A stretch of DNA of 64,000 bases, from assembly GCF_000315625.1 (NCBI RefSeq), contig NW_005434631.1, forward strand, positions 1 through 64,000, in the 5' to 3' direction. Below, one piece after another: positions 121 to 33,300 of the stretch. Both the position numbers and the translations under genes were made by a program. The stretch is from Guillardia theta CCMP2712 (lineage: Eukaryota; Protista; Cryptophyta). The notes below the pieces were generated by a model. It saw only the letters and a list, made by a program, of their open reading frames with translations, searched no databases and was not told the origin of the DNA. The first letter of the stretch is position 1. Every line of letters starts with the position of its first letter.

Positions 121-3100
121 TTGCTTGGGCTGGCAGGGACGTGCCGGGGATGTCGGGAGTGCGGGGAGGGCGAGTACAAGGCCGGAGGCTGCAACGGGAC
201 GTCAGACACGACATGTCGCAACTGCAGTCATGTTGTTTGTGGGGCTGGACGTTATCTACAATCCTGTGGCTTCGGGCTGACTGGCAGCTGTGAGGATTGT
301 GGCATCTGTTCGCCAAGTCAGTATCAGCTTTCTCCGTGCAGCTCATTATCAAATCGAGTTTGTTTGAACTGCTCGTCATTGCGTTGTTCAGATGCTTTCT
401 ATCGAAGTGGGTGTGGGAACGGTTCCATGGGAGAGTGTTTAGGCTGCAAGGTTTGTTCCTCCTTTCAGTACGAGGTGTCATCGTGCAGTCAAAGTGCAGA
501 TCGTGTGTGCTCAGATTGCAACCTGAGGCCATGCAATGTTGGTGAGTACCTTCAAGGTTGTGGCAATGGAAGTGCAGGAACTTGTACGCAGTGTCATCGC
601 TGTTTGTCGAATCAATTCGTGACGTCAAATTGCACCAAGTTCCAGAACACAAACTGTTCAGACTGCCGTGCTTGTTCAGGCACGCAGTACGAGTACTCTG
701 CATGTTCGCTATATTCGAATCGAGTATGTCACGAATGCTCGGAGATCCAGTGTCCTCCGGGCACTTACTTGGCTGGATGCGGAAATGGAAGCAAAGGCAC
801 TTGCTGGGAGTTCCCGTCTGTTGTGAGTGTGACGCCATCTTCAGGATGCAGTGGACGAAGTTTTGTGGCTCGAATAGTAATCCGCTCCCCTCAGATTGAG
901 GACCTTCCTATCACTAGAGTCTCTTCGCCTTCCATGAATACTACGGCTCTTTCTCCGCAGTACGATACCAGCAAGCAGATCATCTCATTGGATGTGGTGA
1001 TAGAATCTGGTCCAAGCTTGATGGGTGTATACGGTATCGACGTCATGCTTTGCCAGCATTCGCCTTGTGTTCGCAACACAAGCTTCCTGGTAGAATTGAT
1101 CAGCCAGACAGCAGTGACATTGATTGATTCCTTTCCTTCGTCGGGGTATCGGTTCTCCTACACTCCATACATTGTACGACTATCAAATGTACCTGCAGGT
1201 CTCACAGCCACTGCTGTGCGAATAGTCATAAGTCCAACCAACGAATCTATAGATGCATCAAGCGTGACATACGAGGCTTCGCCGTTCTGTTCGAACTTGG
1301 CGACCATCCAGTTTCTCCTGCCCCCGATGTCTGCCAGTGCTGCTGTGAGGCCAACAATCATTGGGAGCTTGAGTCGGAGATCGTCGACTTTCCGGTTGGA
1401 GTTACAGGAGTTTCAGTACATTGCAGCTCCGAGCGTTGAAGTGGCTTCAATGTTCCCCACCACAGGGGGAGTGTCGCAGCCAGTGCGGATACAAATCTCG
1501 ATACAAAACTTTCCCGAGACCGACGCGGCAGGCAATGGCTGCACGGACGTGGGAGTCTTGTTTGTCAGCGCATCTCTGACCAATGCGACTTCTTTGTCAG
1601 GACGGCTGGAGAGTTGTCAGAGACAGAAGGCGTCTTACATGCTCGGTCCCATGACCGTCGATGTGTCATCCCCAAGCGGTGATTCCGTGTCCCCTGGATA
1701 CGCGAATGTCATTGTGTATCATAAGAGATACTCTACAAGCATGGTGAACGTGAAGAACACTGATGCAAAAGCTACTTTCGACTCATTTCTATTCTTCAAT
1801 GATAGAAAAGCGAGGATCTACTTGATCCTGAACGAGTATGGCGATACTGGTGTGAATACGATCAGGGCCAAGGGAAGCACCACTACCAGGGTGTCTCTTT
1901 TCATAGAGAATATCGATTCATCGGTCATGCCTTCTGAATACACAATCATGGTGGGCAAATATCGGTATCGCAACAACTGCACTAGCTATTCGGACTGCTT
2001 CCCTGTTCTGTTGGTATCCTTGAACGCCGAAACTCGTACAGGATCATCAAATTTGAGGTGCAAGCTAATATGATCGAAGGGGTTGTTTCAGCAGGGACAG
2101 TAGGAGGGATCTTGGTGTATGGGGTTGTAGATTGTCCTACTTCGTGTTGTCAGCAGATGTCATGCGATACCGCGTGTAGGCCGTATGTGAGCAACTGCTT
2201 CACAGTGAGTTATTATGACGACAGGGAGCCCTACGTGCAATATGTCTCAAGCTCGCAGGGGCCGGATACCGGAGGAAACTCGATCGACATTGGCATTGCA
2301 AACTTTCCCTTGGTGACCACGAAGAATCTGATAATACAGATCGCAGGAAAGAACCAGTCGACGAGCAACTGGCTTTTGCTGAGGTCTGTGATTGAAGTGA
2401 CGGAAGTGAGAGTGTTTCCTTCGCCGTTTGATCTAGGATCGAATGCGCAGCAGATAGTGGAAGTTCGCATTCTACCGACAAGCAACCTTCTCAAAGCTGT
2501 GCGTTTCAACTACACGTACATTGCTTCACCACAACAGCTCAACTCAGTTTCTGCAACGTCTGGCCCGAGCACTGGATGTCAAGCCATCAAGGTGGAGATT
2601 GGATATTTCCGGTATCCTACGGCCATCGAGAGCTGCATTGATGTGCCGTCACAATGCCTCACAGTGCAATTCGGGTCGACCATCCTGACTGATGCCCCAG
2701 CAGCAACAACGTGTGACAGACTTGCAGGAACCGTCTCAATATCAAAACTGTCATCGCGACTCTCGTGCGTTCTCAACATCATCACGCCTGCGACTGCACC
2801 GGGGGAGGTTGCGGTTGTCATGAAAGCGACCGGATGTGGAGCAAGCTGCCAGCAAAGTCGCTTCAGCTTTTTCCAGCAGGATATGAGTGTACTTGGAATC
2901 GTGAATCCAATACCCACTCAGGGAAGTGCTCAAAGCGCATCCTTGTATGAAGACATATACCTTGTGAACTTCCCTTGGGAGACCTACTCTGCCTTGACTG
3001 CTGGGGTCAAAGGAAGTGTGACCATGGCAGCGAGTATAGACTCTCCTCCAAGCAGGGTTGACGATAAAGTGACAAGGATACGTGTCAAGTTGCCAGCGTA

Positions 3101-6100
3101 TCCAGCTTTAGAGCACGTGCTTGTGTCCATCAACGTCACATCAGGAAGCCTCGTGAAATCTGTCAACTTTGACTATACCTTCTTCGACGGCTTTGCCTTG
3201 AGAATCCTGAGCATGAATCCCGATGGAGTGCCAGTGTCGACTTCAGTATTTGGACGAACCCTTGCTTACAGGACGGAGGTCACGTTGCTTCTTGCCAACT
3301 GTCCGCAAGACTTGAAAGCTGGTCAGCTCAATGTCACAGTGAATGGATACACATCACAGGTGGTCTCGCTTTCCAATGAAGCCACGTGCCAGCCCGGGGT
3401 CCCAGACTGCAATCGGACACGGCTGAAGGTGCTGCTGACGCCTCTGAGCTCACTGGGCAATGCGACGGTGAAGCTGATGGTGTGGAATGGCTCAGGGGTA
3501 AGCAGCTACCTTCGCTCAGTAGCAACGTACCTGCCGTGCAACTATGAGACATTTTGTAGTCTGCAGGAGGTTCCAGATGTGTTGCTGCTGCAAGGCGTGT
3601 CTGCTGCACAATGCAACGCACAATTCTGCGTGAAACAAGTATTGGTTCCAGACGCGTCGATTCTATCTGTGAATCAAACTGTTGGTGTGGCCACTGGAGG
3701 GAACAAGGTGCTGGTTGAGTTTAGTAACTTCCCATCACTTCAACCTGCAGACATCGAGATCATGTTGAGGATTCCTGGCATCCAGCTGATTGTTGCTACG
3801 GAGAGTTTGAGCCTAGCAAGAGGATCTAGCCTGCAAGGCTCCACGGGCTCGCTAGTGATGACGATTCCTTCCGTGAGAATCGATGAGGATCAGCTTGCAA
3901 CAGTCACCCTCACGTTGACCTTGGGTTCTGCAATCAGAACGGCATCGTTCCAGTATCAATATCTTCGCTTGCTGAGTGGGAACGCAACTGTACGATCATT
4001 CTCTCCGATGTCCATCATGCGAACAGATGATCTCACTCTACAAGCTGAGCTTGTGAACGTACCTCAGCTCAAGGTCCCTTACAATGCTTCGTCAATCCTA
4101 TATAGCTTAGCATCTTCCTCGCTAAGTCAACAGTCCATGCCAACCAGCACCATCTTCGCGTCAAACTCCAAGAGCACGAACCTGCTGATACGTGTAGCGG
4201 CCCCCAAGTCGGGTTGGTCCGTGGGGTTGATATCGATTTCAGTTTGCTATCGGGCATCGCTCGAAGTCTGTGCCTTGTACGGACTTGGTGCTAAGGACTG
4301 TACTGGAGAAGTGTTATGCGCTCGAGGAGCGAAGATGCAAATCACTGTGCAAGACACTCCTCCTCCGAGACTGATGCGCTTCTATCCAACATCAGGGCCG
4401 ACGGACGTGAATACCGCAGTTCAGTTCACGGTTGCTTACCTGAGACCAGGTACTTCGGTGACAGAGCTGAATGTCAGCCTGCACACCACACAGAACGAAG
4501 TCAAGATGGTCAGTGTAGTGAGCATCAGTCTGAAGAACCCAAGCTGCTTGTATCCGGAGTGTGCAGTGCATGACGTAGATATCCTGATGCCAGCATTACA
4601 GGGATACGTAGGGATAGCGCAGGTCACTGTCACGTATCAGTACAAGACGGTTTCCTTTGACTTTCAGTACGTTGCGAGCAATGCTCCCAAGATTAGGCTC
4701 TTCCAACCTTCTTCGCAGTACATCTGCAAGCAGCCAAGCAGTGTCAGCTGCCAAGCTCAATCTTCCAGGGCCAGCATCTTGGTTGAGAACTTTATGCCTC
4801 CATGTGCCTCTTCGCAATGCACGGCTGAGCAAGCAGGGATCACTATCACCTTCACCGTGAGATCGGTTTCTTCGAGTCCTGCTAGCGTAGTGCTCGGTGT
4901 TGTCAACGGACTGCTTCAGCTCAGCTTTGTTGTCCCTCCCTCGTTTCTACCAGGTGCTTGCAGCGTTGAGATCGCTAACGGCACCAAGAAGGTGCAATAT
5001 AATGACTTCGCGTATCTGATTCCGCAAGCTCAAGTGGATCCAGTCGATTGTCCGGTAGACGGAGGCATCCAGATGAACGTGTCAGCCTGGGGGCTGCTGC
5101 CCTCACCTGGCAACTTGAGTGTTTCCGTGCAGAGCACGCAGATAGTAGGATGGACTCTACGTCAGTACTCCTCGCCCTGGAACTATGTTTACTTGTCGTA
5201 TGTTGCACCGGCAGCTCAAAGCATTGGAAGTGCGATAGGGGTAGTAGGGAATGGTTATGACCTCTCATCGGCAAAGTTCTACTTCGACTACGTGAACAGA
5301 CCTGCGATCTCAAGCCTTGTACCCAACGTGGCGACGTCACAGGGTAGGACGTACCCGAGCCTAGTGGGAGACCAAGCATACATGACAACCCTTACCATCG
5401 TCAACTTCCCCATCGTAAAGTCTCCGGCAGAGGTGTCGTTGAAGTTCGGGAGCGTCGAATGCCAGTGTGTGCTGCCGTCCTGCAGCTTGTACTGTGGGAT
5501 CGTGCGGCTGACAAGTACAAGTGCCTACACAGAGATGCAGATCGTCGTACCTCCGGCATCTGCTGTGCTGGGAGGCATGAACTCGGGCCAAACAAGTGTC
5601 AGTGTACGGCAGGTGAACACAGGAGCGCTGAGAGGCTTCATCAGAGAAGCCTCGACGTCTTTCACGTATTACAAGCCAACTCCAGCCGTGAAGCTCGTGC
5701 GCTTCTGTAGGACGTGCAATCCCGGGAGCATGTGTATCGTGAATGGCGTGTGCGGGAACGGCAAGTCTCCGCAGACAGGGTACGTGACTTGGTCAGACCT
5801 CCAGCAGTCGAACGGCAACATCGTTGAAGTGGCTGTAGAAAACATCGAAGACTGGATAGCGGTCAGCATCGCCAAGGATGGAACATTTGTAGGGTCAGCT
5901 GGGTTTGTTGTGACCTTCGGAAGCGATGAAGGCGTGGTGGACGCGAGCAGCGGACTTCGCTCGGTGACGGTGGTTGACGCTCACAGCGCGATATTCCAAA
6001 CGAAGATCCCGGCGATTCAAGGGATCGGCAGCATTGCCTGTACTGTGTCTCTTCGAACGAGTGAAAGCTCGATGTTGAGCTGGACGGTGGCCTTCCAGAT

Positions 6101-9100
6101 GCAGGTGGTCGATGACAGGAGGGAGCTCAAGTGCGTGTCCAGGTCATGCGTAGCGTCTGTGACGAACCCGTCGCCGCTGATAGCGTCTATCAAGAACATT
6201 CCTCTCACCACCAGGAGCGCGGCTCAAGACCAGCTCGTCATCATGATAGGCTCACTGCGTGCAGACTTTACAGTTGTCTCATGCAACACTACAATGATCA
6301 TCATCTCTGTCAACCCCCCCGAGTACACATGCTCAGCTTGCACAGTATCGGCTGGGTCGTCGACGGTGACATTTCAAGCGACCATGAGGTCTGACCCATC
6401 GATCGTTGCTCGCACAGATTTTGTGTATTGGGCCAGCCCGAAGGTGACGCGAGCAAGCTTCGACTCAACCGCAGCCTTCATCACCGTGACTCTGGATCAA
6501 GCAACCGACGGGCGGTCCCTTGTGCAGGCGTCGGGCTCCTCATGCGATGGCTTCGTGGGAAGCGAGGCGGGTCTGCTCGGCCAGACGGCACCAAGATGCG
6601 TGTGGACCACAGATCAAGCTTTCAACATCTTCCTCTCCCCCGGCGCCACCGTCTTGCCAAGCTCGCTCATCACCGTCAGAGGCATCCGGTCTGTAAATCA
6701 AGTCTCGATGCCCATGCTTGCTGCTGTCAGGGTCGAGAAACCTCTTTCTCCTCTGTACCCCTCGGTGCAGATCAGCGCCCCACAAGAGGTGGACCCTTGC
6801 TCGCCTCTCACAGTGCGAGCCCTTGCTAAGAGCGCTCGACAGCTGAGCTACACGTGGCGGTGTCTCAACGACGATGGGCTGAACACATTCCTTGCAAGCT
6901 TGCTGCCAAGCACGAGCATCATACAATTTGAAGCTGGAGTGGCTGAGATGGCTTCGACGGGGAAGACATACACGATCGGAGTGACAGTGAAGGACTTCTT
7001 GGGTTTCTCAAGCAAGGAGGCGGTGACGTCGATAACCAAGAAAGCCTTCCCTTCCCCTACTGTTGTCTTCACGCCTCAGTCACCCTTATCAACGTTTGTA
7101 GATCAGGATGTCACTATCACTGCAACCGCTGTGTTCTCGTCATGCCCAGTAGCAAAGAACGACATGATCTTTCAGTGGTCGCAATCTTCCGGCGTTGCCG
7201 TGTCTACGAGCTACGTCCCAAGCAGCATGTCGCAGCTCTGGATACCCAAGTATGAGCTACAAGCTGGGAACACGTACACGTTTGACGTCAGCGTGAGCCT
7301 GCAGGGAGACAGCTCGGTTTCTACGACGGCGAGCTTCACTCTTACAATAGGGAACCTGCCGCTGATGGGTGCAATAGCTGGCGGCGATCTGATCCAGATG
7401 TCGGAGGTTTCGGAGCTCCGGTTGGATGCAAGCAGCTCAAGAGACTTTGACGTGAAGAAAGGCGTTGACCAGGGGCTGACCTACGACTGGAGTTGCTATT
7501 TCTCGGATGGAACCTTCTCAATGCCGTGCTTGAACAAGAATCAGCAACTGCTTGAGCTTCCCAGTGGGGCCCAGCTGGTCGTCCCGGGAGGGTCGCTGAC
7601 GGACACCGGAGAGCTCTTCTACACGTTCTCGCTGGTAGTCTCCAAGGGAGACAAGACTCCTTCAACGGCCTCGAAGCGCGTGCAAGTCACGAAAGCTTTC
7701 GTGCCGGCGGTGATGCTGACGTCAAACGTACAGACGTACGATGGTGCCATGGGCATCGTCAACCAGGGAGACAAACTCGTGTACGAGGCTTCTTGTCCTT
7801 ATCCTTCAGCTCTGTATGTCTGGACCATCGCACCCGCCCCCAACGTGGGTTACGACGTAGGGTCGGTGTTCCCCTTCGGACGCAACGGGGCGATCTTCTT
7901 GATGGAGAGCGGGTCTTCTGCCTTGAGTCAGGGGCTGACGTACAGCATAGCGGTTGAGTGCTCGGTGAACGGCAGCGTGGGGACATCGTCGTCGAGCTTC
8001 TTGGTCAACACTCCTCCTCAGGGAGGGACATGCTATGCCTGCCTGGTGTCAGACTCTGGGAGCTGCACGAAGCAAGGTAGGCCGCTGCTGGACGAGTTCG
8101 TCGTTACTTGCGCGAACTGGATAGACCCAGACACGCCTCTGACGTACGAGTTCGGGTTCTCCTACGTGCAGGACGGGGAGACAATCACCAAGTGGTTTCA
8201 GCCCACGACGCTGCCCTACCTGATCATGCGGCTTCCGTCAAGCAGTGCCATCCAGATGAACGCGATTGTGTCGGACGGCAGAGGCGCCTCCACGTCCGTC
8301 ATGCAGGATACCGTCAAGACCGTGACGACGGGGAGAAGGCTGTTACAAGCAGCGAGTGACTGGTCCAGCGTGACGCAGGACATGAGCGAGAAGGCGCAGA
8401 CGCAGAACGTAGCAGGACTCAACCAGCTTATCACTTCGGTATCACTGGAGCTTGTGGCTCAACTGAATGCAAATGTGACGGACTTGTCTCATTCTCGTAC
8501 GCTGATTATGTACATGCTGTCGCTGCTGAAGCCCACGTACGGATCGTATCCGGCCACTACGGACTTCATGTCCGATGCGCTGAGCACTCTTGAGAGCGTA
8601 GGGAGCGAGCTGGGCTTGCAGAGCAACACATCGGTTTCGCAGATCGTCGAGCAGGTGGATGGTCTGCTGCAGCGCTATGCCGGGGAGACAGTGGAAGGGA
8701 TCATGCTGCATGTGTTGAAAATCTTCGGTGTCGCCATGAAATGGATGGAGACCGGGTCATATACGGACGGTCCCATCCTAGACCGGGTGACGTCAAACAC
8801 GGCTGCGGTGACGGAGGGTTTCTCAGTCAGCCTTGCAACAGGTCAAAGCGTGCAGTACGTACAGCAGTACTCGTCACATCGATTGGTTGCCGACAACGTG
8901 GAGGGGGTTGTGGGAGGCAAGAGCGTATTGGATGTGCCTCCAGGGTTGATGGGCATGTTTCAGGCGAAGAACGCCTCGTTTCGATACTCGTCTGGTCAGA
9001 CGGGAGTGACGGGGCGAGTAACAGTAGGAGCTCACATGTACGGAGCTGTGAGCGGTCCAGTGAACGGATCCACTCCACTCACACCGCTGATAGGAGTTTC

Positions 9101-10024
9101 CATGTCAGTGAGCAACCCGATATCTCAAGTCTCGATCGTGATGCCGGTGAGCCGGACGGCCGTCGTGACTGCGTCACAGTCTGTGCTGGTGGCGAGATGT
9201 GTGCGGTGGAGCAACGGAGGGTTTGAAGACAGCGGGTGCAGTGTAGAAGGGGTGGATCTGACGGCTGGAACGGTGACTTGTCGATGCTCGGTCGGAGTAC
9301 CAGGGGCTCGAAGGAGGCTAGCCCAGCAGCCAGCCACGTTCCAAGGTGTAACAGTGATAGCGGTCGGCGAGTTTCAGACGTACGACTGTGAGTTGATGAG
9401 CAAGAACTGCACTGGAGGACAGTACTTGTCTGGCTGCGGCAACGGGTCCCGGGGAGAGTGCCTGACGTGTTCCACGTGCACGCAGAGCGAGTACATGCTG
9501 ACGGACTGCTCGCCCTCCGCGAACCGACGATGCGCCGCCTGCTCTCAGCTGTACTGCAACCAAGACTACCGCAGATCAGCGTGCGGCGGGGGAGGCAGAG
9601 GTAGCTGTGTCGCATGCACGAGGTGTGGAGCAAACCAGCGCCAGCTCGTGAGCTGTGGGGAGAACTCGGCGTCGCAAGACGCTGTGTGCATCGACACGGC
9701 TGACGGGACAGCGACTGGGACGAAGTTGCTCGTGCTGACAGGAGCAGTGCGGGTGGGGAGCAGCCTGAATGAGAATATGAGAGCAAAGTTCATATTGGGG
9801 TTGGCGGCAGCAGCAGGGGTTGACAGCAGTAGCGTGAACATCACGTACATACGGGAGGTGCATGGAGCTCGTCGGGCACTGGCTGTAGAGTACGATGTGG
9901 GCTATCAAGTCTTCCTTGAGCTGAACGCGGAATGGAAGAGCGTGCAATCTAACCTGGGGTCAGAGAAGCTTCTAGAGGCTCTGAGAGGACAAGGGCTTCA
10001 GAATGTGCAGATCTTGGAATATCC
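121..10024 (+). repeat. Left arm of ~9.9 kb near-identical inverted duplication (partner 21819-31722)
   Basis: Mirror ORFs keep a constant coordinate sum of 31843/31844 (9850+21993; 1079+30765). Identity stops after cttggaatatcc (10024/21819). Confidence 0.97.
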
Positions 10025-10532
10025 GACTCTTTCTGTTATCACACTCGGCCCTTCAAGTTCCCCCACTATCATTGTTGCTGTTCCCACCAGTACCGTCGAG
10101 CCAACTTCCAAGTTCAACTTTGTTACATCTGCAGGATTTGCAGTTGTTGTCTCGATTGGCGGTTTTGTCATGTTGGTTGCAATCTTCGTGTTCAGGAGGT
10201 TCAGATCTTCCAGGAAGAAACTCCAAGTCGCTTCGTTCGTTTTCGAACCACGTCAGGTCGATGCTGACGAGAGGCCGCCAGCGATCGAGGGGGAGCGGGC
10301 CGTCGTCGAGGATCAGGTGCTTACGAGCGGGGATGAGTCGTCAGTGTCGGAGCAGGAAGAAAGTCAGTCGGAGAGCCACAGTCAGGAGGCAGAAATGAGA
10401 GACATCCTCTGCTATGCTGACATCAGTCACTTCAACGAGGGCTCCTCAAACGAGTCTGCCAACTCTGAGTTTGTGCACGCCAGACAAGTCCAGGATGAGA
10501 GCATACATGAAGGGACACCTTACCTCACTTGA
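137..10532 (+). CDS. Giant single-pass receptor, copy A (Cys-rich repeats, IPT/TIG-like region, REJ, degenerate GPS, TM). Terminal ~10.4 kb exon; 5' exons lie upstream of the window; 1-bp frameshift at ~2043
   Basis: ORFs 121..2073 and 2058..10532 join if one A is restored at 2043 (ggatc vs ggaatc in copy B). Splice acceptor ctggcag ends at 136. REJ-like motifs LRLDASSSRDFD and VNTPPQGGTC...FVVTCANWIDPDTPLTYEF; GPS-like CVRW...SGC...TCRC; TM FAVVVSIGGFVMLVAIFVF followed by RRFRSSRKK. Confidence 0.85.
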
Positions 10533-18000: not shown

Positions 18001-18138
18001 TTCCTGCGGGTGAGCAAGCCTGGCCTTGCCATTGTCGTGATGCTCCTTTCTGGTTTTCTCTTCTGTCCGCCTCCTCCCGGAGGCACTCAGAGCCCTGGTT
18101 CTTCTGCCAACCATCATCGTGGCCTCTCAACATAGCCA
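15084..18138 (-). CDS. Multi-exon coiled-coil protein of unknown function (boundaries approximate)
   Basis: Chain of minus-strand E/K/L/Q-rich heptad ORF fragments (e.g. ELEVEMEELRRENLNLKILVGDLERDK) separated by short GT-AG introns; likely stop after LEAIEFSYLPD. Confidence 0.6.
16553..16612. repeat. (CTCCT)n pentanucleotide microsatellite, intronic
   Basis: Direct tandem ctcct run. Confidence 0.9.
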
Positions 18139-18438: not shown

Positions 18439-18540
18439 TTCTCGCCGTTTGGCCTGCGGGACAGTTGTCAGGGTCAAGCCTTTTCGTCCGAGTCTCCTGA
18501 TTGTCCTCGTACTGATTTTTAACTTAACTTTGAGTTAAAA
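18439..18540 (+). repeat. Dispersed short intergenic repeat, copy 1
   Basis: ttctcgccgtttggcctg..cagggtcaagcc..attgtcctcgtactgatttttaacttaactttgagt; related copies at 37.8 kb and 53.7-54.7 kb. Confidence 0.85.
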
Positions 18541-21264: not shown

Positions 21265-21358
21265 CATACAAGGACGAATGGGAACTGCACAACGAGCAAC
21301 GAAGAACCTCACAAACTCTAGACATTCATTACATTGCCTTATAAGCGTGATTACCTTA

Positions 21359-24300
21359 CTACGAGATATGACGAGCTGAGAAAGGATGCATTTCATCATC
21401 CGAATCTGTATGGCCCTCTGCCGTCGCTCTTCCCGCTCGGTTCTCACTCGTCAAAGCTCCAACAGTCTGAGCGTCTGCCGTGCCCTCGATGGTCTCAGCT
21501 GCGCTCTGTCCTACCTGCTGCGACTCTTCGCTCTTGCACGTCCAGCAGCGAGCTTTCGGTCCTCGCCTGCAGTATGTACAAGCAAAGCACATGCACATCG
21601 TTCCCGCTATGCAAGGAAGGACACAGATCAAGACCACATTGATAGACGAACTGATCTTTCCTTCTGCTGTTGGTGGAAGGGGCGTGGTGGACAGCGGCAA
21701 GGTGGTCTCCTGTGGCGCGTAGGATAGCTTGGTTGTAGCTGCTTCAGTTGTCCCATCGACATACGGGCCAGACGTCGAAGCAGTTTGAGAACCTCCAACA
21801 AGGTACACGGACACTGAAGGATATTCCAAGATCTGCACATTCTGAAGCCCTTGTCCTCTCAGAGCCTCTAGAAGCTTCTCTGACCCCAGGTTAGATTGCA
21901 CGCTCTTCCATTCCGCGTTCAGCTCAAGGAAGACTTGATAGCCCACATCGTACTCTACAGCCAGTGCCCGACGAGCTCCATGCACCTCCCGTATGTACGT
22001 GATGTTCACGCTACTGCTGTTAACCCCTGCTGCTGTCGCCAACCCCAATATGAACTTTCCTCTCATAGTCTCATTCAGGCTGCTCCCCACCCGCACTGCT
22101 CCTGTCAGCACGAGCAACTTCGTCCCAGTCGCTGTCCCGTCAGCCGTGTCGATGCACACAGCGTCTTGCGACGCCGAGTTCTCCCCACAGCTCACGAGCT
22201 GGCGCTGGTTTGCTCCACACCTCGTGCATGCGACACAGCTACCTCTGCCTCCCCCGCCGCACGCTGATCTGCGGTAGTCTTGGTTGCAGTACAGCTGAGA
22301 GCAGGCGGCGCATCGTCGGTTCGCGGAGGGCGAGCAGTCCGTCAGCATGTACTCGCTCTGCGTGCACGTGGAACACGTCAGGCACTCTCCCCGGGACCCG
22401 TTGCCGCAGCCAGACAAGTACTGTCCTCCAGTGCAGTTCTTGCTCATCAACTCACAGTCGTACGTCTGAAACTCGCCGACCGCTATCACTGTTACACCTT
22501 GGAACGTGGCCGGCTGCTGGGCTAGCCTCCTTCGAGCCCCTGGTACTCCGACCGAGCATCGACAAGTCACCGTTCCAGCCGTCAGGTCCACCCCTTCTAC
22601 ACTGCACCCGCTGTCTTCAAACCCTCCGTTGCTCCACCGCACACATCTCGCCACCAGCACAGACTGTGACGCAGTCACGACGGCCGTCCGGCTCACCGGC
22701 ATCACGATCGAGACTTGAGATATCGGGTTGCTCACTGACATGGAAACTCCTACCAGCGGTGTGAGTGGAGTGGATCCGTTCACTGGACCGCTCACAGCTC
22801 CGTACATGTGAGCTCCTACTGTTACTCGCCCCGTCACTCCCGTCTGACCAGACGAGTATCGAAACGAGGCGTTCTTCGCCTCAAACATGCCCATCAACCC
22901 TGGAGGCACATCCAATACGCTCTTGCCTCCCACAACCCCCTCCACGTTGTCGGCAACCAATCGATGTGACGAGTACTGCTGTACGTACTGCACGCTTTGA
23001 CCTGTTGCAAGGCTGACTGAGAAACCCTCCGTCACCGCAGCCGTGTTTGACGTCACCCGGTCTAGGATGGGACCGTCCGTATATGACCCGGTCTCCATCC
23101 ATTTCATGGCGACACCGAAGATTTTCAACACATGCAGCATGATCCCTTCCACTGTCTCCCCGGCATAGCGCTGCAGCAGACCATCCACCTGCTCGACGAT
23201 CTGCGAAACCGATGTGTTGCTCTGCAAGCCCAGCTCGCTCCCTACGCTCTCAAGAGTGCTCAGCGCATCGGACATGAAGTCCGTAGTGGCCGGATACGAT
23301 CCGTACGTGGGCTTCAGCAGCGACAGCATGTACATAATCAGCGTACGAGAATGAGACAAGTCCGTCACATTTGCATTCAGTTGAGCCACAAGCTCCAGTG
23401 ATACCGAAGTGATAAGCTGGTTGAGTCCTGCTACGTTCTGCGTCTGCGCCTTCTCGCTCATGTCCTGCGTCACGCTGGACCAGTCACTCGCTGCTTGTAA
23501 CAGCCTTCTCCCCGTCGTCACAGTCTTGACGGTATCCTGCATGACGGACGTGAAGGCGCCTCTGCCGTCCGACACAATCGCGTTCATCTGGATGGCACTG
23601 CTTGACGGAAGCCGCATGATCAGGTAGGGCAGCGTCGTGGGCTGAAACCACTTGGTGATTGTCTCCCCGTCCTGCACGTAGGAGAACCCGAACTCGTACG
23701 TCAGAGGCGTGTCTGGGTCTATCCAGTTCGCGCAAGTAACGACGAACTCGTCCAACAGCGGCCTACCTTGCTTCGTGCAGCTCCCAGAGTCTGACACCAG
23801 GCAGGCATAGCATGTCCCTCCCTGAGGAGGAGTGTTGACCAGGAAGCTCGACGACGATGTCCCCACGCTGCCGTTCACCGAGCACTCGACCGCTATGCTG
23901 TACGTCAGCCCCTGACTCAAGGCAGAAGACCCGCTCTCCATCAAGAAAATCGCCCCGTTGCGTCCGAAGGGGAACACCGACGCTACGTCGTAACCCACGT
24001 TGGGGGCGGGTGCGATGGTCCAGACATACAGAGCTGAAGGATAAGGACAAGAAGCCTCGTACACGAGTTTGTCTCCCTGGTTGACGATGCCCATGGCACC
24101 ATCGTACGTCTGTACGTTTGACGTCAGCATCACCGCCGGCACGAAAGCTTTCGTGACTTGCACGCGCTTCGAGGCCGTTGAAGGAGTCTTGTCTCCCTTG
24201 GACACTACCAGCGAGAACGTGTAGAAGAGCTCTCCGGTGTCCGTCAGCGACCCTCCCGGGACGACGAGCTGGGCCCCACTGGGAAGCTCAAGCAGTTGCT

Positions 24301-27300
24301 GATTCTTGTTCAAGCACGGCATTGAGAAGGTTCCATCCGAGAAATAGCAACTCCAGTCGTAGGTCAGCCCCTGGTCAACGCCTTTCTTCACGTCAAAGTC
24401 TCTTGAGCTGCTTGCATCCAACCGGAGCTCCGAAACCTCCGACATCTGGATCAGATCGCCGCCAGCTATCGCACCCATCAGCGGCAGGTTCCCTATTGTA
24501 AGAGTGAAGCTCGCCGTCGTAGAAACCGAGCTGTCTCCCTGCAGGCTCACGCTGACGTCAAACGTGTACGTGTTCCCAGCTTGTAGCTCATACTTGGGTA
24601 TCCAGAGCTGCGACGTGCTGCTCGGGACGTAGCTCGTAGACACGGCAACGCCGGAAGATTGCGACCACTGAAAGATCATGTCGTTCTTTGCTACTGGGCA
24701 TGATGAGAACACAGCGGTTGCAGTGATAGTGACATCCTGATCTACAAACGTTGATAAGGGTGACTGAGGCGTGAAGACAACAGTAGGGGAAGGGAAGGCT
24801 TTCTTGGTTATCGACGTCACCGCCTCCTTGCTTGAGAAACCCAAGAAGTCCTTCACTGTCACTCCGATCGTGTATGTCTTCCCCGTCGAAGCCATCTCAG
24901 CCACTCCAGCTTCAAATTGTATGATGCTCGTGCTTGGCAGCAAGCTTGCAAGGAATGTGTTCAGCCCATCGTCGTTGAGACACCGCCACGTGTAGCTCAG
25001 CTGTCGAGCGCTCTTAGCAAGGGCTCGCACTGTGAGAGGCGAGCAAGGGTCCACCTCTTGTGGGGCGCTGATCTGCACCGAGGGGTACAGAGGAGAAAGA
25101 GGTTTCTCGACCCTGACAGCAGCAAGCATGGGCATCGAGACTTGATTTACAGACCGGATGCCTCTGACGGTGATGAGCGAGCTTGGCAAGACGGTGGCGC
25201 CGGGAGAGAGGAAGATGTTGAAAGCTTGATCTGTGGTCCACACGCATCTCGGTGCCGTCTGGCCGAGCAGACCCGCCTCGCTCCCCACGAAGCCATCGCA
25301 CGAGGAGCCCGACGCCTGCATAAGGGACCGCCCGTCGGTTGCTTGATCCAGAGTCACGGTGATGAAGGCTGCGGTTGAGTCGAAGCTTGCTCGCGTCACC
25401 TTCGGGCTGGCCCAATACACAAAATCTGTGCGAGCAACGATCGATGGGTCAGACCTCATGGTCGCTTGAAATGTCACCGTCGACGACCCAGCCGATACTG
25501 TGCAAGCTGAGCATGTGTACTCGGGGGGATTAACAGAGATGATGACCATTGTAGTGTTGCATGAGACAACTGTAAAGTCTGCACGCAGTGAGCCTATCAT
25601 GATGACGAGCTGGTCTTGAGCCGCGCTCCTGGTGGTGAGAGGAATGTTCTTGATAGACGCTATCAGCGGCGACGGGTTCGTCACAGACGCTACGCATGAC
25701 CTGGACACGCACTTGAGCTCCCTCCTGTCATCGACCACCTGCATCTGGAAGGCCACCGTCCAGCTCAACATCGAGCTTTCACTCGTTCGAAGAGACACAG
25801 TACAGGCAATGCTGCCGATCCCTTGAATCGCCGGGATCTTCGTTTGGAATATCGCGCTGTGAGCGTCAACCACCGTCACCGAACGAAGTCCGCTGCTCGC
25901 GTCCACCACGCCTTCATCGCTTCCGAAGGTCACAACAAACCCAGCTGACCCTACAAATGTTCCATCCTTGGCGATGCTGACCGCTATCCAGTCTTCGATG
26001 TTTTCTACAGCCACTTCAACGATGTTGCCGTTCGACTGCTGGAGGTCTGACCAAGTCACGTACCCTGTCTGCGGAGACTTGCCGTTCCCGCACACGCCAT
26101 TCACGATACACATGCTCCCGGGATTGCACGTCCTACAGAAGCGCACGAGCTTCACGGCTGGAGTTGGCTTGTAATACGTGAAAGACGTCGAGGCTTCTCT
26201 GATGAAGCCTCTCAGCGCTCCTGTGTTCACCTGCCGTACACTGACGCTTGTTTGGCCCGAGTTCATGCCTCCCAGCACAGCAGATGCCGGAGGTACGACG
26301 ATCTGCATCTCTGTGTAGGCACTTGTACTTGTCAGCCGCACAATCCCACAGTACAAGCTGCAGGACGGCAGCACACACTGGCATTCGACGCTCCCGAACT
26401 TCAACGACACCTCTGCTGGAGACTTTACGATGGGGAAGTTGACGATGGTAAGGGTTGTCATGTATGCTTGGTCTCCCACTAGGCTCGGGTACGTCCTACC
26501 CTGTGACGTCGCCACGTTGGGTACAAGGCTTGAGATCGCAGGTCTGTTCACGTAGTCGAAGTAGAACTTTGCCGATGAGAGGTCATAACCATTCCCTACT
26601 ACCCCTATCGCACTTCCAATGCTTTGAGCTGCCGGTGCAACATACGACAAGTAAACATAGTTCCAGGGCGAGGAGTACTGACGTAGAGTCCATCCTACTA
26701 TCTGCGTGCTCTGCACGGAAACACTCAAGTTGCCAGGTGAGGGCAGCAGCCCCCAGGCTGACACGTTCATCTGGATGCCTCCGTCTACCGGACAATCGAC
26801 TGGATCCACTTGAGCTTGCGGAATCAGATACGCGAAGTCATTATATTGCACCTTCTTGGTGCCGTTAGCGATCTCAACGCTGCAAGCACCTGGTAGAAAC
26901 GAGGGAGGGACAACAAAGCTGAGCTGAAGCAGTCCGTTGACAACACCGAGCACTACGCTAGCAGTACTCGAAGAAACCGATCTCACGGTGAAGGTGATAT
27001 TGATCCCTGCTTGCTCAGCCGTGCATTGCGAAGAGGCACATGGAGGCATAAAGTTCTCAACCAAGATGCTGGCCCTGGAAGATTGAGCTTGGCAGCTGAC
27101 ACTGCTTGGCTGCTTGCAGATGTACTGCGAAGAAGGTTGGAAGAGCCTAATCTTGGGAGCATTGCTCGCAACGTACTGAAAGTCAAAGGAAACCGTCTTG
27201 TACTGATACGTGACAGTGACCTGCGCTATCCCTACGTATCCCTGTAATGCTGGCATCAGGATATCTACGTCATGCACTGCACACTCCGGATACAAGCAGC

Positions 27301-30300
27301 TTGGGTTCTTTAGACTGATGCTCACTACACTGACCATCTTGACTTCATTCTGTGTGGTGTGCAGGCTGACATTCAGCTCTGTCACCGAAGTACCTGGTCT
27401 CAGGTAAGCAACCGTGAACTGAACTGCGGTATTCACGTCCGTCGGCCCTGATGTTGGATAGAAACGCATCAGTCTCGGAGGAGGAGTGTCTTGCACAGTG
27501 ATTTGCATCTTCGCTCCTCGAGCGCATAACACTTCTCCAGTACAGTCCTTAGCACCAAGTCCGTACAAGGCACAGACTTCGAGCGATGCCCGATAGCAAA
27601 CTGAAATCGATATCAACCCCACGGACCAACCCGACTTGGGGGCCGCTACACGTATCAGCAGGTTCGTGCTCTTGGAGTTTGACGCGAAGATGGTGCTGGT
27701 TGGCATGGACTGTTGACTTAGCGAGGAAGATGCTAAGCTATATAGGATTGACGAAGCATTGTAAGGGACCTTGAGCTGAGGTACGTTCACAAGCTCAGCT
27801 TGTAGAGTGAGATCATCTGTTCGCATGATGGTTGTCGGAGAGAATGATCGTACAGTTGCGTTCCCACTCAGCAAGCGAAGATATTGATACTGGAACGATG
27901 CCGTTCTGATTGCAGAACCCAAGGTCAACGTGAGGGTGACTGTTGCAAGCTGATCCTCATCGATTCTCACGGAAGGAATCGTCATCACTAGCGAGCCCGT
28001 GGAGCCTTGCAGGCTAGATCCTCTTGCTAGGCTCAAACTCTCCGTCGCAACAATCAGCTGGATGTCAGGAATCCTCAACATGATCTCGATGTCTGCAGGT
28101 TGAAGTGATGGGAAGTTACTAAACTCAACCAGCACCTTGTTCCCTCCAGTGGCCACACCAACAGTTTGATTCACAGATAGAATCGACGCGTCTGGAACCA
28201 ATACTTGCTTCACGCAGAATTGTGCGTCGCATTGTGCAGCAGACACGCCTTGCAGCAGCAACACATCTGGAACCTCCTGCAGACTACAAAATGTCTCATA
28301 GTTGCACGGCAGGTACGTTGCTACTGAGCGAAGGTAGCTGCTTACCCCTGAGCCATTCCACACCATCAGCTTCACCGTCGCATTGCCCAGTGAGCTCAGA
28401 GGCGCCAGCAGCACCTTCAGCCGTGTCCGATTGCAGTCTGGGACCCCGGGCTGGCACGTGGCTTCATTGGAAAGCGACACCACCTGTGATGTGTATCCAT
28501 TCACTGTGACATTGAGCTGACCAGCTTTCAAGTCTTGCGGACAGTTGGCAAGAAGCAACGTGACCTCCGTCCTGTAAGCAAGGGTTCGTCCAAATACTGA
28601 AGTCGACACTGGCACTCCATCGGGATTCATGCTGAGGATTCTCAAGGCAAAGCCGTCGAAGAAGGTATAGTCAAAGTTGACAGATTTTACGAGGCTTCCT
28701 GATGTGACGTTGATGGACACAAGCACGTGCTCTAAAGCTGGATACGCGGGCAACTTGACACGTATCCTTGTCACTTTATCGTCAACCCTGCTTGGAGGAG
28801 AGTCTATACTCGCTGCCATGGTCACACTTCCTTTGACCCCAGCAGTCAAGGCAGAGTAGGTCTCCCAAGGGAAGTTCACAAGGTATATGTCTTCATACAA
28901 GGATGCGCTTTGAGCACTTCCCTGAGTGGGTATTGGATTCACGATTCCAAGTACACTCATATCCTGCTGGAAAAAGCTGAAGCGACTTTGCTGGCAGCTT
29001 GCTCCACATCCGGTCGCTTTCATGACAACTGCAACCTCCCCCGGTGCAGTCGCAGGCGTGATGATGTTGAGAACGCACGAGAGTCGCGATGACAGTTTTG
29101 ATATTGAGACGGTTCCTGCAAGTCTGTCACACGTTGTTGCTGCTGGGGCATCAGCCAGGATGGTCGACCCGAATTGCACTGTGAGGCATTGTGACGGCAC
29201 ATCAATGCAGCTCTCGATGGCCGTGGGATACCGGAAGTATCCAATCTCCACCTTGATGGCTTGACATCCAGTGCTCGGGCCAGATGTTGCAGAAACTGAG
29301 TTGAGCTGTTGTGGTGAAGCAATGTACGTGTAGTTGAAACGCACAGCTTTGAGAAGGTTGCTTGTCGGTAGAATGCGAACTTCCACTGTCTGCTGCGCAT
29401 TCGATCCTACATCGAACGGCGAAGGAAACACTCTCACTTCCGTCACTTCAATCACAGACCTCAGCAAAAGCCAGTTGCTCGTCGACTGGTTCTTTCCTGC
29501 GATCTGTATTATCAGATTCTTCGTGGTCACCAAGGGAAAGTTTGCAATGCCAATGTCGATCGAGTTTCCTCCGGTATCCGGCCCCTGCGAGCTTGAGACA
29601 TATTGCACGTAGGGCTCCCTGTCGTCATAATAACTCACTGTGAAGCAGTTGCTCACATACGGCCTACACGCGGTATCGCATGACATCTGCTGACAACACG
29701 AAGTAGGACAATCTACAACCCCATACACCAAGATCCCTCCTACTGTCCCTGCTGAAACAACCCCTTCGATCATATTAGCTTGCACCTCAAATTTGATGAT
29801 TCCTGTACGAGTTTCGGCGTTCAAGGATACCAACAGAACAGGGAAGCAGTCCGAATAGCTAGTGCAGTTGTTGCGATACCGATATTTGCCCACCATGATT
29901 GTGTATTCAGAAGGCATGACCGATGAATCGATATTCTCTATGAAAAGAGACACCCTGGTAGTGGTGCTTCCCTTGGCCCTGATCGTATTCACACCAGTAT
30001 CGCCATACTCGTTCAGGATCAAGTAGATCCTCGCTTTTCTATCATTGAAGAATAGAAATGAGTCGAAAGTAGCTTTTGCATCAGTGTTCTTCACGTTCAC
30101 CATGCTTGTAGAGTATCTCTTATGATACACAATGACATTCGCGTAGCCAGGGGACACGGAATCACCGCTTGGGGATGACACATCGACGGTCATGGGACCG
30201 AGCATGTAAGACGCCTTCTGTCTCTGACAACTCTCCAGCCGTCCTGACAAAGAAGTCGCATTGGTCAGAGATGCGCTGACAAACAAGACTCCCACGTCCG

Positions 30301-33300
30301 TGCAGCCATTGCCTGCCGCGTCGGTCTCGGGAAAGTTTTGTATCGAGATTTGTATCCGCACTGGCTGCGACACTCCCCCTGTGGTGGGGAACATTGAAGC
30401 CACTTCAACGCTCGGAGCTGCAATGTACTGAAACTCCTGTAACTCCAACCGGAAAGTCGACGATCTCCGACTCAAGCTCCCAATGATTGTTGGCCTCACA
30501 GCAGCACTGGCAGACATCGGGGGCAGGAGAAACTGGATGGTCGCCAAGTTCGAACAGAACGGCGAAGCCTCGTATGTCACGCTTGACGCATCTATAGATT
30601 CGTTGGTTGGACTTATGACTATTCGCACAGCAGTGGCTGTGAGACCTGCAGGTACATTTGATAGTCGCACAATGTATGGAGTGTAGGAGAACCGATACCC
30701 CGACGAAGGAAAGGAATCAATCAATGTCACTGCTGTCTGGCTGATCAATTCTACCAGGAAGCTTGTGTTGCGAACACAAGGCGAATGCTGGCAAAGCATG
30801 ACGTCGATGCCGTATACACCCATCAAGCTTGGACCAGATTCTATCACCACATCCAATGAGATGATCTGCTTGCTGGTATCGTACTGCGGAGAAAGAGCCG
30901 TAGTATTCATGGAAGGCGAAGAGACTCTAGTGATAGGAAGGTCCTCAATCTGAGGGGAGCGGATTACTATTCGAGCCACAAAACTTCGTCCACTGCATCC
31001 TGAAGATGGCGTCACACTCACAACAGACGGGAACTCCCAGCAAGTGCCTTTGCTTCCATTTCCGCATCCAGCCAAGTAAGTGCCCGGAGGACACTGGATC
31101 TCCGAGCATTCGTGACATACTCGATTCGAATATTGCGAACATGCAGAGTACTCGTACTGCGTGCCTGAACAAGCACGGCAGTCTGAACAGTTTGTGTTCT
31201 GGAACTTGGTGCAATTTGACGTCACGAATTGATTCGACAAACAGCGATGACACTGCGTACAAGTTCCTGCACTTCCATTGCCACAACCTTGAAGGTACTC
31301 ACCAACATTGCATGGCCTCAGGTTGCAATCTGAGCACACACGATCTGCACTTTGACTGCACGATGACACCTCGTACTGGAAGGAGGAACAAACCTTGCAG
31401 CCTAAACACTCTCCCATGGAACCGTTCCCACACCCACTTCGATAGAAAGCATCTGAACAACGCAATGACGAGCAGTTCAAACAAACTCGATTTGACAATG
31501 AGCTGCCCGCAGAAAGCTGATACTGACTTGGCGAACAGATGCGACAATCCTCACAGCTACCTATAAGCCCGAAGCCACAAGTTTGCAGGTAACGTCCAGC
31601 CCCACAAACAACATGACTACAGTTGCGACATGTCGTGTCTGACGTCCCGTTGCAGCCTCCGGCATGTACTCGCCCTCCCTGCACTCCCGACATCCCCGGC
31701 ACGTCCCTGCCAGCCCAAGCAAGAGTCAGTCTCCCCTCTCGGCCCTGCCCTGCCCTACTCCCTCTGACCCCTTGTCGACCTCGGTCCCCTGCGCCCAGCC
31801 CCTCCCCATCATCGTCCNNNNNNNNNNNNNNNNNNNNNNNNNNNNNNNNNNNNNNNNNNNNNNNNNNNNNNNNNNNNNNNNNNNNNNNNNNNNNNNNNNN
31901 NNNNNNNNNNNNNNNNNNNNNNNNNNNNNNNNNNNNNNNNNNNNNNNNNNNNNNNNNNNNNNNNNNNNNNNNNNNNNNNNGCACGCCTCTGCCGGGCACG
32001 CCCTGCACTCGCCCTCGCTGCCTCTCCCGCACCCGGCCAGGTACTTGCCGTCCTCGCAAGCGATCGCACTGCAGTTGCGACATGTCGTGTCTGACGTCCC
32101 GTTGCAGCCTCCGGCCTTGTACTCGCCCTCCCCGCACTTCCGACATCCCCGGCACGTCCCTGCCAGCCCAAGCAAGAGTCAGTCTCCCCTCCCCTCTCGG
32201 CCCTGCCCTGCCCTATTCCCTCTATCAGCCCCCTTCCTCGCTTGCCCTTGTTCTTCCGCTCCAAGCCTTTGCCCTCCCCGTCCCCTACTCTGGCCCTCCT
32301 CGTCTCTACCCTGCAGCTCCCACTGCTTGCTTACCGTTGCTCCGCCCTCCGCAGCCTGTCAAGTACTCCCCGGCCCTGCAGCTCCCGCACCCTGTGCACG
32401 TCCCGTTCGAATGACCCCCGCACCCGGTCAAGTACTCCCCGGCCATGCACGCCTCTGCCGGGCACGCCCTGCACTCGCCCTCGCTGCCTCTCCCGCACCC
32501 GGCCAGGTACTTGCCGTCCTCGCAAGCGATCGCACTGCAGTTGCGACATGTCGTGTCTGACGTCCCGTTGCAGCCTCCGGCCTTGTACTCGCCCTCCCCG
32601 CACTCCCGACATCCCCGGCACGTCCCTGCCACCCCAAGCAAGAGTCAGTCTCCCCTTTCCGCCCTGCCCGGCCCTACTCCCTCCGACCCCTTCTCGACCT
32701 CGGTCCCGTGCGCCCAGCCCCTCCCCATCACCGTCCCGTAATCTGGCCCTCCTCGTCTCTACCCTGCAGCTCCCACTGCTTGCTTACCGTTGCTCATGCC
32801 CTCCGCAGCCTGTCAAGTACTCCCCGGCCTTGCAGCTCCCGCACCCTGTGCACGTCCCGTTCGACTGACCTCCGCACCCGGTCAGGTACTCCCCGGCCAT
32901 GCACGCCTCTGCCGGGCACGCCCTGCACTCGCCCTCGCTGCCTCTCCCGCACCCGGCCAGGTACTTGCCGTCCTCGCAAGCGATCGCACTGCAGTTGCGA
33001 CATGTCGTGTCTGACGTCCCGTTACACGAAATGCTTTCAAATTGATTATCTGAACAACTTGAGCAAGACGTACATCGACCTGCAGCAAGACTAAACACGA
33101 CTCCCCTCCCCTCTCGGCCCNNNNNNNNNNNNNNNNNNNNNNNNNNNNNNNNNNNNNNNNNNNNNNNNNNNNNNNNNNNNNNNNNNNNNNNNNNNNNNNN
33201 NNNNNNNNNNNNNNNNNNNNNNNNNNNNNNNNNNNNNNNNNNNNNNNNNNNNNNNNNNNNNNNNNNNNNNNNNNNNNNNNNNNNNNNNNNNNNNNNNNNN

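What the first reader, a model, noticed from the sequence alone, without database searches (positions are those of the whole stretch)
121..31722. Candidate invertible receptor locus: shared ectodomain in 9.9 kb inverted arms, two alternative TM/cytoplasmic tails inside
Seen: two convergent giant receptor genes are near-identical over ~9.9 kb (about two dozen amino-acid differences, two 1-bp indels). Identity ends abruptly at 10024/21819, right after ...QILEYP. Beyond it, A has a short stalk, TM and an acidic tail; B has a Thr/Pro stalk, a Cys-rich TM and an unrelated tail. Inference: a crossover anywhere in the arms would invert the inner 11.8 kb and exchange the tails between two different promoters/N-terminal arrays without breaking a gene. 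This would be a flip-flop way to recouple extracellular recognition to different signalling outputs. The faint residual similarity past the boundary (EYPTLSV vs EYPSVSV) suggests old paralogs homogenised by conversion up to that point.
Basis: partly seen in the sequence, partly recalled or inferred. Interest (0 to 1): 0.85.

Follow-up and report, generated by a model that had tools for sequence, protein, structure and literature searches.

The report
Inverted duplicate receptor genes, different tails
Two giant surface-receptor genes of the alga Guillardia theta face each other as a real 10-kb inverted duplication that gives one outer domain two unrelated membrane tails, but nothing shows that the segment between them flips, so it is best read as an ordinary recent gene duplication.

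Summary
Arms A 77-10024 (+) and B 31761-21819 (-) are 99.1% identical. Identity stops at one base, after QILEYP, and the stalk/TM/cytoplasmic tails are unrelated.

The gap at 16191-16290 lies in an intron of a coiled-coil gene. A Hanusia phi transcript protein runs colinearly through the exons on both sides, so the join and the inverted orientation are very probably right. No read or contig bridges the gap.

New facts:
- The window starts at base 1 of G. theta scaffold JH993007.1, so A's promoter and N-terminal array are not assembled.
- The nuclear genome is haploid, so the arms are paralogs, not alleles.
- The core arms differ by 0.66%, evenly spread, with pS 0.021 and pN/pS 0.17. That fits one past copying event followed by constrained divergence, not ongoing homogenisation.
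- B's tail is transcribed and polyadenylated near 21309.
- Each copy carries one frameshift as assembled, and the reference has a proven local error in B's tail.
- Contig depth hints at a third, B-type partial copy.

Passive inversion between the arms is possible but untested. The spacer encodes no recombinase. A flip would only swap the upstream parts. Interest is modest. First readers noted other near-identical inverted repeats (a palindrome and an inverted channel-gene pair) elsewhere in this genome.

The parts
77..10024 (+). Arm A: ectodomain-coding part of gene A (GUITHDRAFT_110005). The core 350-10024 is 99.34% identical to B. The outer 77-349 is about 94% identical and lies in the Cys-rich exon/intron array. 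As assembled the ORF is split at 2042/2043 by one missing base.
21819..31761 (-). Arm B: ectodomain-coding part of gene B (GUITHDRAFT_110009). It holds TNFR-Cys repeats, a long beta-rich region, a REJ domain (Pfam E 6e-42), a GPS-like Cys motif and a second TNFR-Cys block. As assembled, one base is missing at about 31666, which puts the first arm exon out of frame.
10025..10532 (+). Tail A: short stalk, TM helix (AGFAVVVSIGGFVMLVAIFVF, then RRFRSSRKK), acidic/Ser-rich cytoplasmic tail, stop at 10530-10532.
   Evidence: no read test of this junction
21309..21818 (-). Tail B: Thr/Pro stalk, Cys-rich TM, unrelated cytoplasmic tail, stop at 21359-21361, 3' UTR to the poly(A) site at about 21309. 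It is transcribed.
   Evidence: RNA depth 56, T15 loose end at 21309, contigs crossing 21819; MMETSP transcript protein P0003
21536..21547 (.). Patch where the reference disagrees with the independent data. X2 shows a net +3 nt. Contigs of X1 and X7 break here and RNA reads hang loose. The transcript protein reads ARVNPDVK, not ARCWTCK.
11981..15037 (+). Spacer gene 1: uninterrupted 1018-aa ORF with two class III cyclase catalytic domains.
15252..18114 (-). Spacer gene 2: coiled-coil gene GUITHDRAFT_110007 (570 aa). The assembly gap lies in its intron between about 16113 and 16379.
16191..16290 (.). Assembly gap (100 N) flanked by CT-rich simple repeats. It is not bridged by any read or contig. 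Continuity is inferred from the gene that spans it.
18839..21535 (+). Spacer gene 3: Omp85/Sam50-like gene, spliced with introns of 42-88 nt plus one of 367 nt. The RNA contig that carries it runs on to 21535, over gene B's 3' end (convergent). The public gene call starts at 18839 and its end was not seen.
31762..37072 (-). Upstream part of gene B: tandem Cys-rich units of about 454 bp (exon + intron) and 165-bp repeats, broken by six assembly gaps. The matching part of gene A lies beyond the scaffold end.

Best explanation
This is a real inverted segmental duplication in the haploid nuclear genome of Guillardia theta. Two convergent paralogous genes encode giant single-pass surface proteins: TNFR-type Cys-rich repeats, a long beta-rich region, REJ, a GPS-like motif and one TM helix.

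One past non-reciprocal copying event placed about 9.7-9.95 kb of one gene's ectodomain-coding sequence in front of the other gene's own stalk/TM/cytoplasmic tail. The event could have been a duplication with fusion, or one very long conversion that started in the shared Cys-rich array. Its inner end lies exactly after QILEYP.

Since then the two copies have drifted apart evenly under purifying selection, so both were working genes for most of that time. The cell thus makes the same outer domain with two different membrane and cytoplasmic outputs, from two genes.

The arms are a good passive substrate for homologous recombination, so inversion of the 11.8-kb spacer may occur now and then. It is not a dedicated switch, and it would only exchange the upstream parts.

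Shown: the arms, the boundary, the tails, the orientation, the constraint and B's expression. Inferred: the single-event origin, A's function, and any inversion.
For: - Arms and sharp boundary.
- Paralogs, not alleles: the nuclear genome is haploid (PMC4007541). DNA run X1 shows only fixed differences in the spacer.
- Real divergence, not sequencing noise: 50 synonymous and 27 non-synonymous differences, pS 0.021, pN 0.0036, ratio 0.17, binomial p 6e-14, ts/tv 55/22.
- One event, no later patches: the 64 core differences fit a uniform spread (KS p 0.28). The longest identical run is 731 nt against about 709 expected.
- Orientation: Hanusia phi protein P0007 aligns colinearly with P0005 residues 369-569, across the exons on both sides of the gap.
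- B is expressed: RNA depth, poly(A) end at about 21309, and transcript protein P0003 that is B-phase at every A/B difference it covers.
- The assembly graphs of DNA run X1 and RNA run X7 both branch at exactly 21819. Another sequence therefore shares the arm up to that base.
- Tails unrelated; spacer halves unrelated.
- No recombinase domain in the spacer ORFs scanned; the Omp85-like gene was judged from its precomputed Pfam call.
- No other close paralog in 5.8 billion proteins.
Against: - The A junction at 10024 and A's expression were not tested with reads. The only hints are the graph branch at 21819 and a UniRef100 entry with two members.
- Each copy carries one frameshift as assembled (A at 2042, B at about 31666), and these could not be re-read.
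- A's 5' end is missing from the assembly, so the true outer end of the arms is unknown.
- Contig depth in X1 is about 70 in the spacer, 143-166 in B's tail and 202 in the arm. All three contig-kept runs (X1, X2, X7) end a contig at 24863. This points to a third B-type copy that the model does not place.
- No direct sequence crosses the gap.
Confidence: 0.7

Rival explanations
1. The two genes are old paralogs, and recurrent arm-to-arm gene conversion (concerted evolution, as in sex-chromosome palindromes) keeps their ectodomains alike up to QILEYP.
For: The outer end of the arms grades into a zone of about 94% identity (77-349) instead of stopping dead. Both tails look like proper stalk + TM + basic stop-transfer anchors. 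First readers noted other palindromes in this genome (unchecked).
Against: The differences are evenly spread, with no identical tracts longer than chance gives. pS is 0.021, far above arms kept alike by frequent conversion. The tails and the spacer flanks keep no detectable homology. Ectodomains as old as that would be too diverged to start a 9.7-kb conversion. The 94% zone may simply compare non-equivalent units of a tandem array whose units are 95-99% alike anyway.
Confidence: 0.15
2. The locus is a working flip-flop. Recombination in the arms inverts the spacer often enough, within a culture or population, to re-pair promoters and N-terminal arrays with the two tails. If the two frameshifts are real, it could also change which copy is readable.
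For: Arms of 9.9 kb at 99.1-99.3% identity with an 11.8-kb spacer are the kind of inverted repeats that give recurrent inversions in humans, including one that exchanges the ends of a paralogous gene pair, AQP12A/B (PMC3961182). The orientation is confirmed. The two frameshifts lie at different places in the two copies.
Against: No data on orientation exist here. The spacer encodes no recombinase. The one transcript available is B-phase throughout, with no mosaic. The products of both orientations are nearly the same two proteins. A's upstream part is unknown. The frameshifts may be consensus errors, since the reference is demonstrably wrong at 21536-21547.
Confidence: 0.05
3. The structure is an assembly artefact. 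The arms are one locus or mis-joined contigs, and the inverted arrangement does not exist.
For: This is a draft Sanger-era scaffold with eight gaps in the window. Copy A sits at the scaffold end. A gap lies near the middle of the palindrome and no read bridges it. The reference has local errors.
Against: The A/B differences show a strong selection signature, which errors would not. The genome is haploid. Independent runs branch at exactly 21819, and arm depth exceeds tail and spacer depth. One orthologous transcript joins the exons on both sides of the gap in the same order and strand.
Confidence: 0.07

Closest known systems
Inverted-repeat-mediated polymorphic inversions in humans (e.g. HsInv0241 at AQP12A/AQP12B; PMC3961182)
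   Same: Both have long, highly identical inverted segmental duplications flanking a short unique spacer. The breakpoints can lie inside a paralogous gene pair, so an inversion exchanges gene ends without breaking either gene. The mechanism is passive non-allelic homologous recombination.
   Different: In this locus no inversion has been observed. The arms are almost the whole coding region of two convergent genes, and the parts that differ are the 3' tails inside the spacer plus unknown 5' parts outside it.
Large palindromes with arm-to-arm gene conversion (human Y and X chromosome palindromes; my own knowledge, not checked here)
   Same: Both have gene-bearing inverted arms of several kb to Mb with a unique spacer and very high arm identity.
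   Different: Those arms are about 99.9% or more identical through ongoing conversion. These arms differ by 0.66%, evenly spread (pS 0.021), with no sign of later conversion.
Site-specific invertible segments that swap protein C-termini (phage Mu G segment with Gin, plasmid R64 shufflon with Rci; my own knowledge)
   Different: Those systems use short recombination sites, a dedicated recombinase gene next to the segment, and a single constant part outside it. This locus has 10-kb arms, no recombinase, and two complete genes in either orientation.
Polycystin-1 / sea-urchin REJ family of surface proteins
   Same: Both are very large ectodomains with a REJ domain (Pfam PF02010, E 6e-42) followed by a GPS-like Cys motif.
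   Different: These genes have a single TM helix and no PLAT or 11-TM/channel part. The GPS-like motif lies about 300 residues from the membrane, lacks the HL-T cleavage triplet, and does not reach the Pfam GPS threshold.

Membership tests
Inverted-repeat (NAHR) invertible segment / palindrome | Two long inverted arms of high identity on one molecule | tested here: met
   99.1% over 9.95 kb. The join across the gap is supported by an orthologous transcript.
Inverted-repeat (NAHR) invertible segment / palindrome | Both orientations of the spacer found in cells, strains or populations | not testable with these tools
   Only short reads and contigs were on hand, and the arms are longer than the 6-kb limit of read laying.
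Inverted-repeat (NAHR) invertible segment / palindrome | Traces of exchange between the arms (identical tracts, mosaics) | tested here: not met
   The differences fit a uniform spread, and the longest identical run is as expected by chance. Transcript P0003 is B-phase throughout.
Programmed site-specific DNA inversion switch | Recombinase gene in or beside the invertible segment | tested here: not met
   The spacer genes are a cyclase, a coiled-coil gene and an Omp85-like gene. Other spacer ORFs scanned have no Pfam hit.
Programmed site-specific DNA inversion switch | Short defined recombination sites at the segment ends | tested here: not met
   The repeats are 10-kb coding arms. No other inverted repeat of 200 nt or more was found.
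Polycystin-1 / REJ family | REJ domain | tested here: met
   PF02010, E 6e-42 (B) and 2e-41 (A), nearly full profile length.
Polycystin-1 / REJ family | GPS/GAIN autoproteolysis motif next to the first TM helix | tested here: inconclusive
   The motif CVRWSNGGFEDSGC...TCRCS is seen by eye. There is no Pfam GPS hit at E up to 1 on P0003 and no HL-T triplet. It lies about 300 residues before the TM. No fold test was run.
Polycystin-1 / REJ family | PLAT domain and 11-TM / channel-like C-terminal part | tested here: not met
   Each tail has one hydrophobic helix and ends 120 residues or fewer later. No PLAT or PKD_channel hit.

The most novel reading that the evidence does not exclude
The palindrome flips by homologous recombination within cultures or populations of a eukaryotic alga, re-pairing promoter and N-terminal array with either tail. 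If the two differently placed frameshifts are real, it would also change which copy can be read through. That would be a stochastic, phase-variation-like switch of a giant surface receptor.
Probability: 0.05. Interest if true: 0.75.

Novelty: new member of a known kind. Interest (0 to 1): 0.3.

Why it matters
The locus is a clean natural case of module exchange in a giant receptor gene: the same ectodomain of more than 3,200 residues is joined to two unrelated membrane and cytoplasmic tails, with the junction defined to one base. That helps in studying how protist surface-receptor families diversify their outputs. It also flags a locus where the public G. theta assembly and annotation need repair: the scaffold end, two frameshifts, a wrong patch, a fragmented cyclase model, and possibly a missing third copy. 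If inversion were shown, it would be a rare eukaryotic example of receptor re-coupling by DNA inversion, but nothing here supports that yet.

Tried and rejected
- Reads across the gap: the CT-rich flanks were skipped and the coiled-coil gene is almost silent in the RNA runs, so no bridging read, contig or splice joint was seen. The gap was tested through an orthologous transcript instead.
- Copy number from reads: the DNA runs are kept only as contigs, so depth is a rough k-mer mean. I used it only as a hint for a third copy.
- Search for Hanusia phi or other relatives of the arm end plus tail with P0003: nothing in the allowed length range. Which tail is ancestral therefore stays open.
- Whole-protein search: only the A/B cluster came back, so there is no outgroup paralog for dating.
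- Tail-versus-tail and spacer-half comparisons: no residual homology.
- Allele/haplotig reading: rejected, because the genome is haploid and one gene spans the gap.
- A repeat inside the window as the cause of the common contig end at 24863: rejected, because every 31-mer sampled there occurs only at its arm partner.
- Rfam on the spacer and Pfam on leftover spacer ORFs: nothing.
- Literature search on G. theta duplications: nothing specific.
Full report
**What the sequence shows.** The window holds two inverted arms. The repeat finder reports 2043-10024 / 21819-29800 and 181-2043 / 29801-31663, both 99% complementary. BLAST joins them into A 77-10024 = B 31761-21819, 99.115% identical over 9949 columns, with 81 mismatches and 3 gap openings. 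A base-by-base alignment places the indels at three sites. One is a 5-nt indel at A 100-104, in an intron. One base is missing in B at A178. One base is missing in A at 2042/2043, where A reads acaggatcatc and B reads acaggaatcatc. Identity ends at exactly 10024/21819, after the codons for QILEYP, and beyond that the DNA is unrelated. BLASTP finds nothing between them beyond the shared arm residues and a few positions after them.

**Refinement of the arms.** The outer 77-349 differs at 6.2% of positions. The core 350-10024 differs at 0.66%, which is 64 mismatches. The outer zone lies in a tandem array of Cys-rich exon-plus-intron units. These units are 95-99% alike among themselves: A 31-228 matches B 32265-32068 at 96%, and A 77-163 matches 35190-35104 at 98.9%. 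The outer end of the duplication is therefore blurred by the array.

**Organism and place.** The arm protein's only relatives among 5.8 billion proteins are GUITHDRAFT_110005 (copy A, P0001) and GUITHDRAFT_110009 (copy B, P0002) of Guillardia theta CCMP2712. The locus look-up shows that window base 1 is base 1 of scaffold JH993007.1, which is 577,038 bp long. Copy A therefore sits at the very end of the scaffold. Only 76 nt lie upstream of its arm, so its promoter, signal peptide and N-terminal array are not assembled. B's upstream array (31.8-37 kb) is riddled with six gaps, which suggests why the assembly stopped at A.

**The gap, tested first.** The gap at 16191-16290 is flanked by CT-rich simple repeats. 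No read or contig of four runs bridges it. The public model GUITHDRAFT_110007 (P0005, 570 aa, minus strand, 15252-18114) has exons on both sides. An independent test came from a sister genus. The transcript-derived Hanusia phi protein P0007 aligns colinearly with P0005 residues 369-569. It runs from RHQRLLQQAENVQRDLQDELAK, which lies right of the gap, straight into AREANESQAFAQHRDSMQR and the following exons, which lie left of the gap. Both sides therefore belong to one gene, in the same order and strand. The gap lies in an intron, its length remains unknown, and the arms are very probably inverted as drawn.

**Paralogs, not alleles or errors.** The nuclear genome of G. theta is haploid by qPCR and DNA content (PMC4007541). 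DNA run X1 shows only fixed differences in the spacer. In the coding part of the arms there are 50 synonymous and 27 non-synonymous differences, giving pS 0.021, pN 0.0036 and a ratio of 0.17, with 55 transitions and 22 transversions. The shortage of non-synonymous changes has binomial p 6e-14. Sequencing noise would not respect codon positions, so these are two real copies, and both were under constraint for most of the time since they were last identical. The core differences fit a uniform spread (KS p 0.28), and the longest identical run of 731 nt is what chance gives, about 709 nt. This fits one copying event followed by independent drift. It does not fit ongoing arm-to-arm homogenisation.

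**What the genes are.** Pfam finds TNFR-type Cys-rich repeats and a nearly full-length REJ domain (E 6e-42). A GPS-like Cys motif is visible by eye but gives no Pfam hit. A second TNFR-Cys block follows, then the stalk and one TM helix. There is no PLAT or channel part. The proteins work like polycystin-1/REJ-type adhesion or sensing ectodomains, but they are not full members of that family. First readers noted several such giant single-pass REJ proteins elsewhere in this genome, and the architecture of this very gene is the subject of another note.

**The spacer (10025-21818).** It holds three genes besides the two tails:
- An uninterrupted 1018-aa ORF with two cyclase domains at 11981-15037. 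The public annotation calls only two fragments of it.
- The coiled-coil gene that spans the gap.
- An Omp85/Sam50-like gene, shown spliced in RNA run X7. The same RNA contig runs on over B's 3' end.

Pfam finds no recombinase or transposase domain in the spacer ORFs scanned, and the Omp85-like gene's own Pfam call is Omp85 only. The two halves of the spacer share no DNA similarity.

**Reads (stretch 15960-21959).** B's tail is transcribed. RNA run X21 gives depth 56 at 21360-21559, and reads with a T15 loose end mark a poly(A) site at about 21309. Contigs of X1, X2 and X7 cross 21819 from tail B into the arm. In X1 (DNA) and X7 (RNA) the arm contig starts at exactly 21819, so the assembly graph branches there. 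That is what a second junction (arm to tail A) would cause, and in X7 it hints that tail A is also transcribed. The MMETSP transcript protein P0003 (639 aa) covers the last 1.5 kb of arm B plus tail B. It carries B's residue at every A/B difference, so it shows no mosaic. It also reads ARVNPDVK where the window gives ARCWTCK. X2 shows a net +3 nt there, and X1, X7 and X21 all break or hang loose at 21536-21547. The reference is therefore wrong or polymorphic at that patch. This makes it plausible, though unproven, that the two single-base frameshifts are consensus errors as well. In A the ORF is split at 2042. In B the first arm exon is out of frame at about 31666, and the public model hides this by reading 14 residues in the wrong frame.

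**An unexplained extra.** Contig k-mer depth in X1 is 68-74 in the spacer, 143-166 over tail B (21389-21848) and 202 for the 3045-nt arm contig. Two variants of about equal depth (72 and 82) occur at 21335-21388, and the same variant letters appear in 5-10% of the X21 RNA reads. In X1, X2 and X7 the arm contig ends at the same place, 24863. No repeat inside the window explains that end. Together these suggest a third copy with a B-type tail, covering at least about 21305-24863, that is not in this window and has no annotated protein. The tool itself warns that such depths are not copy numbers, so I treat this as a lead only.

**How it most likely works.** One gene's ectodomain-coding sequence was copied, in inverted orientation, onto or in front of a neighbouring gene's own stalk/TM/tail. 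One end of the event lies in the shared Cys-rich array and the other lies exactly after QILEYP. The result is two genes that present the same outer domain with different membrane and cytoplasmic parts. Gene conversion between truly old paralogs is less likely. The tails and flanks keep no homology, and ectodomains that old would be too diverged to start a 9.7-kb conversion.

The arms (9.9 kb, 99.1-99.3% identical, 11.8-kb spacer) are the kind of inverted repeats that cause recurrent passive inversions in humans. [quoted passage not shown] Occasional inversion here is therefore plausible. It would yield nearly the same two proteins and only re-pair the upstream parts with the tails. It has no dedicated machinery in the spacer, and it could not be tested with the data on hand.

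**Verdict.** The locus is a new member of a known kind, a gene-bearing inverted segmental duplication, with modest interest.

Noticed in passing
window 18433-18535: A short element with a small hairpin (TTTTTAACTTAACTTTGAGTTAAAAA) has summed contig depth of about 1e5 in DNA run X1, against about 70 for single-copy DNA. It has many different flanks, and RNA reads end at 18565. It is probably a very high-copy dispersed repeat (MITE-like). No Rfam family matches it.
   Followed up: partly
window 11981-15037 (+): This is one uninterrupted 1018-aa ORF with two class III cyclase catalytic domains and hydrophobic blocks. The public annotation calls only two fragments, of 167 and 139 aa. It lies 1.45 kb downstream of tail A on the same strand.
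   Followed up: partly
window 21536-21547: The reference letters disagree with three runs and with an MMETSP transcript (net +3 nt; ARVNPDVK instead of ARCWTCK). This is a local consensus error or a strain difference inside gene B's cytoplasmic tail.
   Followed up: yes
window 21305-24863 (not in the window as a separate copy): Depth steps of about 1x / 2x / 3x, paired variants at 21335-21388, and a common contig end at 24863 in three runs suggest a third, B-type partial copy somewhere else in the genome. It has no annotated protein.
   Followed up: partly
window 31818-35516 and 35692-36651: Gene B's upstream region is a tandem array (units of about 454 bp, then five 165-bp copies that are 94-100% identical) broken by six gaps. 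The unit number and the true N-terminus of B are therefore uncertain.
   Followed up: no
window 18856-21535 (+): An RNA contig that carries the Omp85/Sam50-like gene's spliced exons (introns of 42-88 nt plus one of 367 nt) runs on to 21535, past gene B's poly(A) site (about 21309) and stop codon. The two convergent transcripts therefore seem to overlap at their 3' ends.
   Followed up: no
window 16691, 17063, 17084, 21246: DNA run X1 (2021) differs from the reference at these spacer positions, while run X2 (2011) agrees with the reference. At 17139 both runs differ from the reference. X1 seems to be a slightly different line or strain, and the 17139 letter may be a reference error.
   Followed up: no
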